Shown: positions 2,672-12,515 of the stretch, piece after piece
How positions within the stretch are numbered: the first letter of the stretch is position 1
Layout of the letters: every line of letters starts with the position of its first letter
IMG/VR virus record: IMGVR_UViG_2974636107_000001
Location: 1 to 13,669 of that record
DNA length: 13,669 nt
Direction: 5' to 3' (one strand)
Origin: Sulfolobus ellipsoid virus 1 and six more viruses of crenarchaea
The notes under the pieces: model-generated
What the model was told of the DNA's origin: nothing
What the model saw: only the letters and a program-made list of their open reading frames with translations
Database searches by the model: none
Made by a program: the position numbers and the translations under genes

Positions 2672-2673
2672 AT

Positions 2674-2688
2674 GAAAAAGTTTATAAA
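2674..2688 (+). promoter_or_regulatory. BRE + TATA promoter of the major capsid operon
   Basis: GAAAAAG-TTTATAAA, with ATG 2708 20 nt downstream (leaderless spacing). Confidence 0.75.
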
Positions 2689-2707
2689 TAGATTGTTACT
2701 TATGCTT

Positions 2708-3076
2708 ATGTCAGTAGTTGTTGGAAGAATTGCTGGAGCTAATGAGTTGGAAATGCGGTACCAAGCTGGGATTGAGGTTAAACGTGATGTTCAAGTCAAA
2801 AGAGTTGAGAGAAAGATATCGTATAGAGCGCCTAGAATAGAGGACGCAATAGCGTTGAACATATATGTTGAGGATAAGATTAGTGGAATTAAGCCGTATA
2901 TACCTGGTCTAACGGGATTGGTAAGAAAGGCGATTAAAATAGCATATCGTGATGGGGTTGACAGTGCAATGAATATATTTAAGTCATATGATACCGCAAT
3001 ACAGAATGAAATAAGGAAAATAATCGAAGAGGGTCTAAAAATGTATGAAAAAATAAGGAGTGAGGGTAGGCCATGA
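2708..3076 (+). CDS. Major capsid protein 1 homolog (PFV VP1/MCP1-like, SIRV2-fold family), 122 aa from MSVVVGR
   Basis: Basic helical protein behind a strong promoter and coupled to MCP2. MSVV..R...A..L......GIE and PYIPGLTGLVRK resemble my recollection of Pyrobaculum filamentous virus MCP1. The ORF-track start (2672) lies upstream of the TATA box. Confidence 0.7.
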   Translation: MSVVVGRIAGANELEMRYQAGIEVKRDVQVKRVERKISYRAPRIEDAIALNIYVEDKISGIKPYIPGLTGLVRKAIKIAYRDGVDSAMNIFKSYDTAIQNEIRKIIEEGLKMYEKIRSEGRP

Positions 3077-3498
3077 GCTCCCCTATAATTAGTAATTATC
3101 TTGAGGGAATTCGCGATAATAAATATCTGCAACGGATAGAATGGGAAATACAGGTAGCTCAGAGCGGATTCAGAGCTATTCCAATTACTGAGAGATGGTG
3201 GGGTGAGGCATCATATTATATAGACCTAGCCAACAAGATAAAGGCTTTGCCCGAATTGAGCAATGTTAAGACTAAGCCGATTGGATATGCGTTGGCCGCG
3301 GCGAGATACGTTAAACACAACAACTTCGGCATGGCCGAGATATACCTTGATAGATTTGAGTCTGCGCTTGTCCGTAGCGGACTGTCGAGAGATATGGCGA
3401 GAAGGGTTAGAGAGCATGTGGCAAAAATGATAGGGCTTGGTGGTGGAGGCGGTGGTGGAGGAGGCGGTGGAGGCGGTGGTGGAGTAAGTTTGCCTTAA
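3073..3498 (+). CDS. TP2: Major capsid/nucleocapsid protein 2 (probably TP2), 141 aa with C-terminal poly-Gly tail
   Basis: ATGA-coupled to MCP1. Basic helical protein ending in Gly15-VSLP, as I recall for tristromavirus MCP2. Confidence 0.75.
   Translation: MSSPIISNYLEGIRDNKYLQRIEWEIQVAQSGFRAIPITERWWGEASYYIDLANKIKALPELSNVKTKPIGYALAAARYVKHNNFGMAEIYLDRFESALVRSGLSRDMARRVREHVAKMIGLGGGGGGGGGGGGGGGVSLP
3439..3483 (+). repeat. (GGN)15 poly-glycine coding tract
   Basis: ggt/gga/ggc codons, 45 nt, in frame. Confidence 0.95.
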
Positions 3499-7660: not shown

Positions 7661-8362
7661 GTGATAGTAGGTATAACTGATAAATATGTATTTCATTCAA
7701 AACCATTTTCAGCAACTAAGAAGTTTCTAAGATATAAAGATAAAATACATGTATATACTGGCCCAATTTACTTTCTATCTTCAAACATAGATTTGAACTC
7801 ACTTAAGTACTTAATGTCGGATGTAGGATATTGTAGTCCACCAGGTAAGAACAATAGTGACTATCTTACAGCATTCCATTGTGTATCGAGGGAGATGTGC
7901 AATATAGTGAGTAATATACAATTATCGGACGGGACGAAAGTGAATGTAATAAAGACGCCATATATGAAACACTGTAGTAATATTTTATGTAGATTACTAT
8001 TCGAGATTGGACTGAATAGGTTATTTCCAATGTGTATAGAAGATGAAGATTTAGCATGGATAAGTGCTGGGAATAATATTGGACCTACTAAAGGAGTATT
8101 ATTTGCAGGTTCTCTAGGTTCGATATATGGTAGTATTGCAATATTTAGTGGAGATTTAATAGTAGGAAAGAAATACAAGGTGATATCTAGAGATTTCTAC
8201 ATAGGAAAGACAATAGAGTGGGAAACGACTATAAATGGGAAAGGAATATTTTATGTTCTTTATGAAAATGGAAAAGGAATTTGGATAAGAGGATATTACA
8301 GCTTTCCAACGCAGGTTAGGATAAAACCTGGATTCTCTGGAAGCCCAGTGATTGAGGAGTAA
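7661..8362 (+). CDS. Trypsin/chymotrypsin-like serine protease
   Basis: Triad motifs in order: YLTAFHCV (His), EDEDLAWI (Asp), KPGFSGSPVI (Ser). Confidence 0.85.
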   Translation: MIVGITDKYVFHSKPFSATKKFLRYKDKIHVYTGPIYFLSSNIDLNSLKYLMSDVGYCSPPGKNNSDYLTAFHCVSREMCNIVSNIQLSDGTKVNVIKTPYMKHCSNILCRLLFEIGLNRLFPMCIEDEDLAWISAGNNIGPTKGVLFAGSLGSIYGSIAIFSGDLIVGKKYKVISRDFYIGKTIEWETTINGKGIFYVLYENGKGIWIRGYYSFPTQVRIKPGFSGSPVIEE

Positions 8363-8735: not shown

Positions 8736-8998
8736 ATGATTTTTCATAAGGACTCGAGAACAATAGACTTGGATTATGGTCATATTATTATGGGTATTGA
8801 AAGGAAATCTCGAGGAAATTATGACCTATATATACTGATTAAGAAGGAAGGAAAATTTGAAGTTGACAGTATATTTACTGGAGATGTAATGGTGGTTGAT
8901 AGAGGAAGTTTTGTATCGACTTCTAGAGGATTCCCGATGCTTCTTGTAGAGGTTCCCGATCGATAGATTTTAATGCGGTTAAAACTAAATGGACATGA
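8736..8998 (+). CDS. Hypothetical protein (~72 aa after removing the vector-like insert, ...[17 protein letters not shown])
   Basis: Deleting 8920-8963 gives a frame ending TGA 8996-8998, an ATGA overlap with the GT start at 8995. Confidence 0.65.
8915..8964. other. Polylinker-like insert at a ClaI junction (probable artefact)
   Basis: ATCGAC-TTCTAGAGGATTCCC...ATCGAT resembles pUC TCGACTCTAGAGGATCCCC. Near-copy at 9834-9881. Confidence 0.75.
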
Positions 8999-10005
8999 TT
9001 TTGGGTATTAGTGCATATAGAAAAGAAACAAAAACGGGTCTGAGAAACACGATTTATACGGCAATAAATACGGGAAAAGTAAAGAAGATACTTCTGGGAC
9101 TCGATAAACCTGAAGATAAGGAGATATTCAACGACATAATAAACGAATTTAAAGACTATATTATAGACGTAGTATACGCAGAAGGATTGGGAGCTAATAG
9201 AAATGAACTATTAGTACGTGGTTCTGAAGAAAATGAAGACTACATATGCTTGGCTGACAGCCACCTATACTTCATTACACCAGTGGCAGACATAGTTAAA
9301 ACGATGTGTAACTCTCAGGCATGTGATTTCAAACGATTTGACTTTGGATTTGATGTTGAGAACAACCCACTATCAGTACTTAATAGATCGGTACATCACT
9401 TCGGTCAGTTTAATATCGACAGGTTGGCCAATAACTATATCTTCAGTTGTGAATACAAATACTATGCCAATAATCCATTCTTATGCTTCAAGAAAAGCGC
9501 AATTAAGGAGCTACTTAATATATATGGAGGAAAAATAATACCGTGGCAACACTATGGAGCTGATATGGAACAGATATACGTTTCAATAGTGAGAAGATAT
9601 GGGAGAACAGCTGGCAAATGTATCGGAACTTCACCAATATACGGACATAGAGCTACTGTAAGTAATACTGAACATGAATTTTGGAAATCGAGATGGACGA
9701 TTAAAGATTATAGCGAAGGATGGTATCAAGCAAATGCGTGCTTCCTTGCACTTCATATACCTCGAGAGTTGTGGAATCTGAAACCAAGAATATTTGAACC
9801 AGACAAATGTAAATTACATATAAACTTTATAAAATCGACTCTAGAGGATTCCCAAGCTTCTTCTAGAGGTACCGCATCGATGATATATGCAGTTGATGGA
9901 ATAGATAGAAACATACTTAACTATCTAGGTAAATATACGGCTGATAGTACTGGAACTGTAAGCTTAACCAATCTTCAACCTGGTAAATATATAGCTATTG
10001 AGTAA
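8995..10005 (+). CDS. GT-A fold glycosyltransferase (GT2-like, DSH motif); C-terminal ~55 aa unreliable
   Basis: MILGISAY strand, [15 protein letters not shown] and [15 protein letters not shown] motifs. It spans the vector-like insert at 9834-9881. Confidence 0.85.
9834..9881. other. Polylinker-like insert at a ClaI junction (probable artefact)
   Basis: ATCGACTCTAGAGGATTCCCAAGCTT...GGTACC..ATCGAT packs XbaI, HindIII and KpnI sites. The first 15 nt after A (TCGACTCTAGAGGAT) match the pUC polylinker. Confidence 0.8.
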
Positions 10006-10006
10006 T

Positions 10007-11089
10007 GTGTCGTACCAAATAACTATAAATAATAATACTACAAGTAACGTTCAAAATATAGTTATAGCTGATCCTAATCTAGCATCTTTAGGTGAAAATG
10101 TAGTATTTAGTGATTCTCAAGGACCATTATCATCGTTGTATGTATATGATGGTGTATGGGTAGTTAAATTAAGGTCACCGCTTTCACCTGGACAGAGTAT
10201 AACAATAACAGCATCTAGTGGTACACCTAATATAGACCCCACAATAGCACTATACTATAATAATGGAAGCTCATATTCAAACCTTACACTAGTAGGTTCA
10301 CCTACAGTATCTATTGTACAGGACTTTGGTGGATATGCAATAAGTGCATATGCATCTGGGGACTTCTTCTTAGTAGCATCGCCTACTGGATTTACTCCAA
10401 GTAGCAGTAGACTACTAGTTGTTGATAGATGGGCAACTACTCCTACGAGTCTTGACGCAGTAGGTTTGAGGTTATATGCAGATACTAACGACTGGTTCGG
10501 TGTAGTTAGGAAATATATTAATGGAGCTCAGAATGTAAGCATTGAACAAAAGATATCTGGAACATATTCAGTAGTAAATGAAATAGATATATCACAGTTT
10601 GCGGCATTTACTGATCCATTAGTAATGTACTTATCAATAAATGGAAGTACTGCAAACGTAAAGGTATACAAACAGGGCTCAAACATTGGAACTGTAAGTG
10701 GTAACTATTCTACTACTCCATATGGAAATCCATCTATGGCAGGATATGGAACAGTTGATAAGCATTATGCTAACTTTATTGTGTTACCATATGAGCCAGA
10801 CCCACAGGTAACAGTTACTCCTATATCTTCACCATCTCCTACTCCTACACCGACACCGACGCCTACGCCTACACCGACATATGATATCACTTATGTAGTA
10901 TTTGATGTAACGCCTTCACCTACTCCAACTCCTACTCTTACATCGACACCCACTCCTACTCCTACGCCAACATATGATATAACTTATGTAATATTCGATG
11001 TAACACCTTCACCCACACCTACTCCAACACCTACTCCTACACCAACTCCGACGCCAACTCCTACATCGACAACGTCATCTAACATCTAG
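10007..11089 (+). CDS. TPX: TPX surface protein (360 aa from GTG): DUF2341-like N-terminus, beta-sandwich/lectin-like domain, Thr-Pro stalk; anchor in the +1 frame to 11222
   Basis: [20 protein letters not shown] resembles DUF2341. Thr-Pro blocks are separated by YDITYV(V/I)FDV. Matches my recollection of TTV1 TPX. Confidence 0.85.
10832..11066 (+). repeat. Three Thr-Pro blocks separated by two copies of a 10-codon spacer (93-bp period)
   Basis: acatatgatatcacttatgtagtatttgatgtaacgccttcacc at 10877 and acatatgatataacttatgtaatattcgatgtaacaccttcacc at 10970. Confidence 0.95.
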
Positions 11090-11231
11090 TTGTAATCCAA
11101 TAATAACAACAGGTATTCAATTCCTTGACAGTATAGTATTGTGTATAAATGGATTGGGAATAACAGTGTTCATAATAATGCTAATTGTAATAGCAATAAT
11201 AATTATAGCATATATAATATGATAAACATAG

Positions 11232-11366
11232 ATGGAGACTCAGTGTGAATATGGAATACAGTGTACTAATGAAGAAAAATGTATATGGCTCGGAGGTACA
11301 TGTATCAAGAAGTGTGAACATGGATGTTGTTGTATATTTATTACTTTGAATGATACACACTACTAA
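11232..11366 (+). CDS. Small Cys-rich peptide (44 aa, 8 Cys), not in ORF track
   Basis: METQCEYGIQCTNEEKCIWLGGTCIKKCEHGCCCIFITLNDTHY, starting 10 nt after the stop of the TPX anchor frame. Confidence 0.6.
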   Translation: METQCEYGIQCTNEEKCIWLGGTCIKKCEHGCCCIFITLNDTHY

Positions 11367-11403: not shown

Positions 11404-11423
11404 ATCGATCCTCTAGAGTCGAT
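11404..11423. other. Vector polylinker remnant at a ClaI/AccI junction
   Basis: GATCCTCTAGAGTCGA (11407-11422) is a 16-nt match to pUC/M13 BamHI-XbaI-SalI. GT|CGAT is the product of ligating a ClaI end into AccI. Confidence 0.9.
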
Positions 11424-11523: not shown

Positions 11524-11844
11524 ATGATAGCTGAGCAGATATTTATAATAATATTAGTATTAACAGTACTACACACGGCGATTGAAAGGATAGCTAAGCG
11601 TAGTCTATCATATAGTAATGTAAATTACACATATACTCAGTCGATATCGTTCTTAGTGGGATATACTATAGTTTACATAATTATGTCACATATAAGCCAT
11701 GCGGTCATTATATCTATAATGATTATGATATCATATGCGATATATATTGTAATTAAGATGAGAAATAATCAGCAAATACAGAACGATATTGAGATGTTTA
11801 TGTTTGGAATGATAGCTGGACTAGGTATAGAGATAGTAGGATAA
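11524..11844 (+). CDS. Multi-pass membrane protein (106 aa)
   Basis: Three to four hydrophobic segments. Confidence 0.75.
   Translation: MIAEQIFIIILVLTVLHTAIERIAKRSLSYSNVNYTYTQSISFLVGYTIVYIIMSHISHAVIISIMIMISYAIYIVIKMRNNQQIQNDIEMFMFGMIAGLGIEIVG
11779..11835 (+). repeat. Diverged direct repeat, copy 1 (encodes QNDIEMFMFGMIAGLGIEI)
   Basis: 45/57 nt identical to 12459-12515 in a gapless manual alignment. Confidence 0.85.
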
Positions 11845-11854
11845 AGTATATAAA
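11843..11854 (+). promoter_or_regulatory. BRE + TATA in front of the Thr-Pro cassette
   Basis: AAAG-TATATAAA, with GTA 11874 at the 20-nt spacing where other genes have their start codon. Confidence 0.55.
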
Positions 11855-11873
11855 TAAGTAGGAATTAATTAGC

Positions 11874-12458
11874 GTATCTGCAACTCCAACGCCTACGCCT
11901 ACACCCACACCAACGCCAACTCCGACGCCTACTCCTACCCCTACTCCGACACCTACGCCGACTCCCACTCCAACACCTACTCCGACTCCGACACCTACTC
12001 CAACACCAACGCCAACTCCGACACCGACTCCAACGCCAACGCCTACTCCTACACCAACCCCAACACCTACCCCTACTCCTACACCTACGCCGACTCCGAC
12101 TCCGACACCCACTCCTACGCCTACTCCGACTCCTACCCCAACTCCTACTCCCACTCCCACCCCTACTCCGACTCCAACACCGACTCCGACACCTACTCCG
12201 ACGCCTACTCCGACTCCAACGCCGACTCCTACACCAACGCCTTCACCTACACCAACTCCCACCCCTACTCCGACTCCGACGCCAACTCCGACTCCCACTC
12301 CAACGCCTACACCAACTCCGACGTCATGTAAACCGATAATTACTACTGGAGTATCATGGTTAGATACAACGATAATATGTGCTGGAAGTGTTGGTATTTC
12401 GCTATTTGAAATATTACTATCAATACTAGTAATACTGCTTATAATAGCACTGATATAA
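11874..12458 (+). pseudogene. Start-less TPX-like cassette: (Thr-Pro)~73 plus a C-terminal membrane anchor
   Basis: Frame open 11862-12458 with no ATG/GTG/TTG start before the tract. Ends [44 protein letters not shown]. Confidence 0.75.
11883..12323 (+). repeat. 441-nt (ACN CCN)n Thr-Pro repeat with a single Ser
   Basis: 147 codons alternating T/P using all synonymous codons. One TCA at about 12243. Confidence 0.97.
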
Positions 12459-12515
12459 CAGAATGATATAGAGATGATAATATTTGGAATGATAGGTGAC
12501 CTAGGGATGACGATA
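12459..12515 (+). repeat. Diverged direct repeat, copy 2 (QNDIEMIIFGMIGDLGMTI remnant)
   Basis: See copy 1. Lies in frame directly after the cassette's TAA. Confidence 0.85.

What the first reader, a model, noticed from the sequence alone, without database searches (positions are those of the whole stretch)
11843..12458. Silent stalk-plus-anchor cassette: a possible gene-conversion system for surface-protein variation
About 0.8 kb downstream of TPX lies a head-less copy: ~73 Thr-Pro units, the same acgccttcacctac (TPSPT) motif found in the TPX repeats, and a paralogous anchor. It has a good promoter, but GTA sits where a start codon is expected. Recombination with the TPX tract would change stalk length several-fold, swap anchors and bypass the TPX frameshift, like expression-locus/silent-cassette antigenic variation. 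Alternatively, a GTA/GTG misread hides an expressed ~194-aa membrane mucin.
Basis: partly seen in the sequence, partly recalled or inferred. Interest (0 to 1): 0.8.

Follow-up and report, generated by a model that had tools for sequence, protein, structure and literature searches.

The report
Start-less Thr-Pro stalk gene in TTV1
This is the second Thr-Pro-repeat, membrane-anchor reading frame of the archaeal virus TTV1: most likely an ordinary small gene whose start codon reads GTA in an old, error-prone record, not a dedicated silent cassette for surface variation.

Summary
Positions 11883-12323 hold 147 codons (73 Thr, 73 Pro, 1 Ser). A 43-codon Cys-X-Pro-Ile-Ile-Thr-Thr-Gly plus transmembrane tail follows, colinear with a tail lying out of frame behind TPX. 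The 199-codon open frame has no ATG, GTG or TTG. The window is Thermoproteus tenax virus 1 (X14855); variability of this Thr-Pro region was published in 1990.

- A BRE/TATA-like element ranks 8th of 13,651 positions on a matrix built from other promoters of this genome. It places the start codon exactly at GTA 11874.
- Third codon positions of the tract are randomised while first and second positions are almost perfect. The two anchors share only 54% of bases, with a coding pattern of change. These are old, translated paralogs.
- The two Thr-Pro tracts share no run longer than chance, so there is no sign of recent exchange.
- The record retains cloning-vector polylinker with a base error, so a G/A miscall is plausible.

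Homologous crossover with TPX would be in frame and is possible, but it looks incidental. Relatives of the TPX head carry no stalk or anchor. Interest is low to moderate.

The parts
11841..11858 (+). BRE/TATA-like promoter element (ATAAAGTATATAAATAAG)
   Evidence: Ranks 8 of 13,651 window positions on a matrix built from 7 other promoters of this genome, and predicts a start codon at 11874. Same TATA-to-start spacing as genes 4496, 8736 and 12559.
11874..11876 (+). GTA at the position where a leaderless start codon is expected
   Evidence: Upstream in-frame stop TAG at 11859-61. No ATG, GTG or TTG anywhere in the frame up to 12458.
11883..12323 (+). (Thr-Pro) tract: 147 codons, 73 Thr, 73 Pro, 1 Ser
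   Evidence: Third positions are random: neighbour identity 0.23-0.35 against 0.31 expected. The longest internal repeat is 23 nt against a null of 22.
12236..12250 (+). AACGCCTTCACCTAC (TPSPT), the only Ser of the tract, identical to TPX 10909-10923
12327..12458 (+). 43-codon tail [18 protein letters not shown] plus a C-terminal transmembrane helix, then TAA
   Evidence: Kyte-Doolittle 19-residue maximum is 3.0.
11779..11828 (+). Direct repeat copy a: the 3' end of ORF106 (QNDIEMFMFGMIAGLG...)
   Evidence: score 27.5 against null 9.9, sd 1.3, maximum 16.5.
12459..12508 (+). Direct repeat copy b. It begins at the first base after the cassette stop and, in the cassette frame, reads QNDIEMIIFGMIGDLGMTI*
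10007..11089 (+). TPX reading frame: lectin-like head, then 93-nt repeats rich in Thr-Pro, ending in TAG
11076..11089 (+). Near-perfect 7-nt tandem duplication (CATCTAA CATCTAG), inside the 13 nt that TPX has in excess of the cassette. It carries the TAG and shifts the frame.
11091..11219 (+). TPX-side anchor paralog (CNPIITTG...AYII), intact for 43 codons in the +1 frame
11524..11844 (+). ORF106, a small membrane protein whose tail is the source of the flanking repeat
9836..9875 (.). Cloning-vector polylinker left in the record at the left end of the TPX ClaI fragment
   Evidence: A 44-nt match to the 3' end of an unrelated haloarchaeal phage record from the same era. Polylinker search.
11407..11422 (.). 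Cloning-vector polylinker core GATCCTCTAGAGTCGA between the TPX fragment and the cassette fragment
   Evidence: (inverted repeat I2).

Best explanation
The region is an independent, leaderless transcription unit of Thermoproteus tenax virus 1. It encodes a ~194-residue protein with three parts: a long rigid Thr-Pro stalk (probably O-glycosylated), a short Cys-bracketed segment, and a C-terminal transmembrane helix. It is an old paralog of the stalk-plus-anchor module fused to the lectin-like TPX head.

In the deposited sequence its initiator position reads GTA. This is either a G/A base-call error in a 1980s record, or a recent inactivating change in the laboratory stock.

Both modules carry ACNCCN tracts in direct orientation and in the same register. 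Homologous crossover or conversion between them can therefore occur and gives in-frame TPX variants. That would be a by-product of the repeats, not an evolved donor/expression system.

Shown: the anatomy, the promoter geometry, the coding-type constraint, the absence of exchange footprints, and the poor quality of the record. Inferred: transcription, translation, glycosylation, topology and recombination.
For: - Identity: TP1 (113 aa, 1509-1850) and the ORF at 1853-2074 match the coordinates given for X14855 in PMC4625639.
- Promoter: the element at 11841-11858 ranks 8 of 13,651 and predicts the start at 11874. The spacing equals that of four other genes, two of which start with GTG. The GTG-started neighbour ORF220 is held as a protein in public collections.
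- Constraint: in 147 codons the first and second positions have one deviation, while third positions are at random expectation.
- Anchors are colinear: 54% nt and 18/43 aa identity, both Cys kept, differences by codon position 21/11/27, pS 0.62 against pN 0.40.
- No recent exchange with TPX.
- Record quality: 40 nt and 16 nt of vector polylinker remain inside the sequence. One base differs from the same polylinker in another record and destroys its BamHI site.
- GUA would mismatch the initiator anticodon at two positions (established knowledge), so initiation at GTA is unlikely.
Against: - No independent sequence of this virus is available, so the base at 11876 cannot be checked.
- The frame was not found as a protein in public collections in eight tried forms. 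The same negative applies to TPX, so it is weak evidence.
- A protein starting at 11874 has no signal peptide, so its topology and export are unclear.
- Both TP-anchor modules carry a small lesion in the same isolate. That could be read as a designed off/off state resolved by recombination.
- No homolog of the anchor exists anywhere searched.
- The promoter matrix rests on only seven sites.
Confidence: 0.6

Rival explanations
1. Evolved silent donor cassette. The start-less copy is kept as a store of stalk and anchor sequence, and is copied or crossed into the TPX expression locus. This switches TPX between a soluble short-stalk form and a membrane-anchored long-stalk form.
For: - The copy is truncated and start-less, and lies in the same orientation and codon register as TPX.
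- The TPX anchor is cut off by a frame break that such an exchange would bypass.
- Any 24-mer of the cassette tract is unique, so exchange would be heritable and traceable.
- Structural variability of this genome region is published, and a variant strain VT3 exists.
Against: - Single donor.
- Strong promoter-like element with exact start geometry.
- Anchors are 54% identical and not homogenised.
- Longest shared run is 18 nt, against a null mean of 20.
- The variable part is a linker, not the binding head.
- Protein-level constraint is too strong for a copy tested only after rare donation.
- No recombinase or initiator element was seen; Rfam and tRNA scans were empty.
- Archaeal hosts have no antibody-like pressure on surface epitopes (established knowledge).
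Confidence: 0.12
2. Dead relic. The cassette is a decaying leftover of a segmental duplication or insertion, bracketed by the 50-58-nt direct repeat. It has no present function and is prone to loss by recombination between its flanks (680 bp).
For: - No start codon.
- Significant flanking direct repeat whose second copy starts right after the stop.
- The tail copy behind the stop looks degenerate: 3 synonymous and 6 non-synonymous codon differences (read).
- Relatives of the TPX head have no stalk or anchor, so the module is dispensable in the wider group.
Against: - 194 codons remain open in a 37% GC genome.
- The tract is perfect at first and second positions, and the anchor keeps a coding pattern of change. 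Any silencing must therefore be very recent.
- The promoter-like element is intact.
Confidence: 0.22
3. The coding strand is the minus strand. ORF 12298-11798 encodes a (Gly-Val)n protein that shares the same wobble positions.
For: The minus frame is open for 166 codons with a GTG start. Its third positions coincide with those of the plus frame.
Against: - All confident genes lie on the plus strand.
- No promoter-like element for it appears among the top matrix hits.
- The plus frame continues into an anchor with a paralog behind TPX.
- Four of six frames of ACNCCN are stop-free by construction.
Confidence: 0.03

Closest known systems
Variable TPX region of TTV1 (Neumann and Zillig 1990, Mol Gen Genet 222:435 and Nucleic Acids Res 18:195)
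   Same: Same virus, same locus, same Thr-Pro repeats. Both papers are cited for TPTX repeats in TTV proteins. From memory only: a variant (VT3) has an altered TPX repeat region attributed to recombination with a neighbouring Thr-Pro frame.
   Different: Neither paper could be read here. I cannot say whether the missing start, the promoter geometry, the flanking repeat or the age of the paralogs were described.
Pro-Thr (PT) linkers of bacterial glycoside hydrolases, e.g. Cellulomonas fimi CenA and Cex (established knowledge)
   Same: Strictly alternating Thr and Pro forming an extended, often O-glycosylated spacer next to a carbohydrate-binding module. The TPX head is CBM66/galectin-like.
   Different: This tract is far longer (73 units), ends in a membrane anchor, and in the cassette has no folded domain attached.
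Thr-rich stalk plus C-terminal membrane anchor of haloarchaeal S-layer glycoproteins (established knowledge)
   Same: Thr-rich stalk directly in front of a C-terminal transmembrane helix. Glycosyltransferase-like genes lie nearby.
   Different: No signal peptide, no large ectodomain, viral origin, no sequence similarity.
Silent-cassette gene conversion (Neisseria pilE/pilS, Borrelia vlsE/vls, Mycoplasma genitalium MgPa repeats)
   Same: A truncated, start-less paralog lies near an expressed gene in the same orientation.
   Different: One donor, a promoter-like element present, no conserved flanking blocks, no exchange footprint, and the variable part is a linker and anchor.
Proline-rich TPTP proteins of Acidianus two-tailed virus (ORF567, ORF1940)
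   Same: Archaeal virus proteins with TPTP-type repeats, compared to TPX in PMC4456609.
   Different: No homology shown. Those repeats are embedded in large proteins.

Membership tests
Silent-cassette gene-conversion system | Donor copies lack promoter and start | tested here: not met
   The start is absent, but a top-ranking promoter-like element sits at exactly the start-defining distance.
Silent-cassette gene-conversion system | Conserved blocks shared by donor and expression locus that bound the conversion tracts | tested here: not met
   Only the degenerate tract is shared (maximum exact run 18 nt). The anchors are 54% identical. Nothing is shared beyond them.
Silent-cassette gene-conversion system | Mosaic footprints of donor sequence in the expressed gene | tested here: not met
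   Shared runs do not exceed a synonymous-codon shuffle: 18 against a mean of 20, with 78% of shuffles reaching 18 or more. This covers one isolate only.
Silent-cassette gene-conversion system | Several donors, or a diversity store | tested here: not met
   Only two ACNCCN regions exist in the 13.7-kb window. About 15% of the genome is not in the record.
Silent-cassette gene-conversion system | Chimeric variants observed in populations | not testable with these tools
   No reads or second isolate are available. The 1990 papers are not held.
Ordinary leaderless archaeal gene | BRE/TATA element about 27 nt upstream of the first codon | tested here: met
Ordinary leaderless archaeal gene | ATG, GTG or TTG as first codon | tested here: not met
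   GTA at 11874. Record quality leaves a miscall open.
Ordinary leaderless archaeal gene | Coding-type sequence constraint | tested here: met
C-terminally anchored membrane protein | Single hydrophobic helix at the extreme C-terminus and no N-terminal signal | tested here: met
   The Kyte-Doolittle maximum is 3.0-3.35 in the last 25 residues of both tails. The TPX N-terminus reaches 0.76. This is a hydropathy calculation only.
PT-type glycosylated linker | Alternating Thr/Pro tract next to a carbohydrate-binding module | tested here: inconclusive
   True for TPX. The cassette has the tract but no module. Glycosylation is not testable here.

The most novel reading that the evidence does not exclude
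Both stalk-anchor modules are deliberately kept 'off' by small lesions: a 7-nt tandem duplication behind TPX and a missing start on the cassette. In-register recombination within the codon-scrambled Thr-Pro tracts acts as a switch. It converts an abundant soluble lectin-like TPX into a long-stalked, membrane-anchored form and deletes 0.8-1.5 kb. That would be a recombinational phase switch in an archaeal virus.
Probability: 0.1. Interest if true: 0.7.

Novelty: already known. Interest (0 to 1): 0.3.

Why it matters
If the favoured reading is right, the result is a correction to an old record. TTV1 would have a second Thr-Pro stalk protein with a membrane anchor, and the TPX region of X14855 contains vector sequence and probable base errors. 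This matters to anyone using the only TTV1 sequence for comparative work on tristromaviruses.

The analysis also gives a clean test for the published variability. Third positions in the tract are random, so any 24-nt stretch identifies its origin. A variant TPX gene can therefore be assigned to the cassette or to TPX without ambiguity.

A programmed switch would be a new kind of variation in archaeal viruses, but the present evidence points away from it.

Tried and rejected
- Relatives of the cassette anchor: word-indexed protein search, degenerate-pattern scans of metagenome and viral contigs and PHROGs. Nothing was found except the same contig and a low-complexity hit.
- Relatives of TPX: the phage collection gave none, IMG/VR gave only the same record, and the word search gave none. 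A full HMMER scan found two relatives. Both end where the TPX stalk begins, and their contigs have no ACNCCN tract.
- Reading the primary papers failed. No held paper describes the variants.
- Exact look-ups to learn how the cassette is annotated were negative, but TPX was negative too, so this is uninformative.
- Translation as an extension of ORF106 is rejected: different frame, with the ORF106 stop (TAA 11842-44) and an in-frame TAG (11859-61) ahead of the cassette frame.
- Initiation at ATT 11868 is rejected: it lies only 21 nt from the TATA start, so probably upstream of the transcript.
- The minus-strand Gly-Val frame is rejected as a shadow of the repeat.
- RNA gene or tRNA: none.
- R-loop-driven recombination: the transcript would be C-rich (GC skew -0.75), which is unfavourable.
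- The bacterial promoter scanner was not used because the host is an archaeon.
- No protein read through a stop was given to any tool.

Full report
**Identity of the window.** The window is the 13,669-bp partial genome of Thermoproteus tenax virus 1 (TTV1, X14855).
- Its ORF at 1509-1850 encodes 113 residues, and an unannotated frame lies at 1853-2074. Krupovic et al. give exactly these for TP1 and 'gp7' in X14855.
- IMG/VR holds the same 13,669-bp contig and nothing closer.
- The taxonomy lists two strains, KRA1 and VT3.
[quoted passage not shown] Both are cited for the TPTX repeats of this virus. Neither could be read here.
- From memory only: the variability paper attributes an altered TPX repeat region in VT3 to recombination with a neighbouring Thr-Pro frame.

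**The observation.** It is fully confirmed.
- Positions 11883-12323 are 147 codons of ACN-CCN: 73 Thr, 73 Pro and one Ser.
- The frame opens at 11862 after a TAG and runs to TAA 12456-58. It contains no ATG, GTG or TTG.
- After the tract come Ser, then a 43-residue tail [18 protein letters not shown] plus a strongly hydrophobic C-terminal helix.
- TPX (10007-11089) ends in TAG. One base later, in the +1 frame, an intact 43-codon paralog CNPIITTGIQFLDSIVLC plus helix follows.
- The two tails align without gaps and keep both Cys.
- At the stalk/anchor junction TPX has 13 nt more than the cassette. These include a near-perfect 7-nt tandem duplication (11076-11089) that carries the stop and shifts the frame.
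- The TPSPT 15-mer is shared.

**Promoter and start.**
- In the upstream regions of the window's genes, a BRE/TATA-like box starts about 27 nt before the first codon at genes 4496, 8736 and 12559, and one base further at 7661. The last two of these four start with GTG. This implies leaderless transcripts.
- A matrix built from seven such sites, without the cassette, ranks ATAAAGTATATAAATAAG (11841-11858) 8th of 13,651 positions. It predicts the first codon at 11874, the GTA.
- ATT at 11868 is too close to the box to lie in the transcript.
- GUA would mismatch the initiator anticodon twice (established knowledge).
- So the unit has everything an ordinary TTV1 gene has, except the last base of its start codon.

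**Age and constraint.**
- Third positions in the tract are random. Identity between units is 0.23-0.35 against 0.31 expected. The longest internal repeat is 23 nt against 22 in synonymous shuffles.
- First and second positions deviate once in 294.
- The anchors share 54% of bases and 18 of 43 residues. Differences by codon position are 21/11/27, with pS 0.62 and pN 0.40.
- These are therefore old paralogs, each kept by selection on the protein. A copy that is never translated, and is tested only after rare donation, would not be expected to look like this. If it is silent, it became so recently.
- The minus strand reads (Gly-Val)n with the same wobble positions, but that frame is a by-product of the repeat.

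**Exchange with TPX.**
- The longest run shared by the TPX tract and the cassette tract is 18 nt. Shuffling synonymous codons gives a mean of 20. This isolate shows no footprint of recent transfer.
- The anchors are not homogenised.
- The geometry does allow exchange. Both tracts are direct and in the same six-base register, so any homologous crossover is in frame. It would delete 0.8-1.5 kb, including the TPX-side anchor, a small Cys-rich frame and ORF106.

**Flanking repeat.**
- The cassette is bracketed by a direct repeat, 11779-11828 and 12459-12508. Its score is 27.5 against a null of 9.9 (sd 1.3, maximum 16.5).
- Copy a is the 3' end of ORF106.
- Copy b begins at the first base after the cassette stop. 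In the cassette frame it reads a degenerate version of the ORF106 tail.
- The similarity continues weakly into the promoter of the next gene.
- This points to an origin by duplication or insertion that placed a promoter copy in front of a stalk-anchor module. It predicts 680-bp deletions.

**Context.**
- The TPX head models confidently (pLDDT 89) as an Ig-like sandwich plus a concanavalin/galectin/CBM66-like jelly roll.
- A full HMMER scan of 1.84 billion representatives found two true relatives. Both stop at ...PYEPDPTITVS, exactly where the TPX stalk begins. Their contigs have no ACNCCN tract or anchor.
- In the relatives the membrane or signal segment lies at the N-terminus. The stalk-anchor module is therefore a TTV1-lineage addition.
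- The gene upstream of TPX (8989-10005) looks like a GT-A type glycosyltransferase by eye, though Pfam gave no hit. A TTV1 glycosyltransferase is mentioned in the literature.
- A Thr-Pro linker next to a carbohydrate-binding module resembles the PT linkers of cellulases.

**Record quality.**
- The TPX-bearing ClaI fragment is bounded by cloning-vector polylinker. About 40 nt lie at 9836-9875; they equal the end of an unrelated haloarchaeal phage record except for one extra T, which destroys the BamHI site. The pUC-type core GATCCTCTAGAGTCGA lies at 11407-11422.
- The left remnant adds 42 nt, in frame, to the 338-residue ORF.
- Hence TPX and the cassette lie on different cloned fragments, joined through vector sequence. 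Base errors in this record are demonstrable.
- A G/A miscall at 11876 is therefore plausible. The 7-nt duplication could even be a read-join artefact.

**Verdict.**
- The best reading (0.6) is an ordinary leaderless gene for a Thr-Pro stalk protein with a C-terminal membrane anchor. Its start codon is either misread or very recently lost.
- A dead relic is the second reading (0.22).
- A dedicated silent-cassette system is unlikely (0.12).
- Recombination between the two tracts is likely to occur and probably underlies the published variability, but as a side effect of the repeats.
- The locus has been known since 1990. What is added here: the promoter geometry, the age of the paralogs, the flanking repeat, the anatomy of the TPX frame break, the lectin-like head with stalk-less relatives, and the vector contamination.

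Noticed in passing
window 9834-9881 and 11404-11423: Cloning-vector polylinker remnants, inverted relative to each other, bound the 1.5-kb ClaI fragment that carries TPX. The left one equals the 3' end of phage phiH record X80163 except for one extra T. It adds 14 vector-encoded residues, in frame, to the 338-aa ORF.
   Followed up: yes
window 11076-11089: The TPX frame break coincides with a 7-nt tandem duplication (CATCTAA CATCTAG) containing the TAG. The anchor behind it is still intact for 43 codons, so the break is recent or an assembly artefact.
   Followed up: partly
window 11779-11828 and 12459-12508: A significant direct repeat brackets the cassette. The second copy starts right after the stop and repeats the C-terminal tail of ORF106. 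It predicts 680-bp deletions.
   Followed up: partly
window 10007-10810; loci L004 3002-4729 and L005 251-1354: The TPX head is an Ig-like plus concanavalin/galectin/CBM66-like fold. Its only two relatives, found in metagenomes, end exactly where the TPX stalk starts. They carry hydrophobic N-terminal regions and FDT..SKYI.P repeats instead.
   Followed up: partly
window 8989-10005: The 338-aa ORF just upstream of TPX looks like a GT-A glycosyltransferase by eye, with no Pfam hit at E<=0.01. This fits possible glycosylation of the Thr-Pro stalks.
   Followed up: no
window 11232-11366: Small Cys-rich frame (44 aa, 9 Cys) between the TPX-side anchor and ORF106. A promoter-like hit (11194) lies about 5 nt off the expected spacing.
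   Followed up: no
window 2675-2692: A strong promoter-like hit inside ORF 2672-3076 predicts a start at ATG 2708. The annotated start of that gene may be too far upstream.
   Followed up: no
window 3438-3484: GGN-rich tandem repeat (period 12) encoding a Gly run at the end of ORF 3073-3498.
   Followed up: no
window 11883-12323: Pro codon usage in the cassette tract differs from the rest of the genome: fewer CCA, more CCG and CCT (chi-square p = 0.004). The tract is 61% GC in a 37% GC genome.
   Followed up: partly
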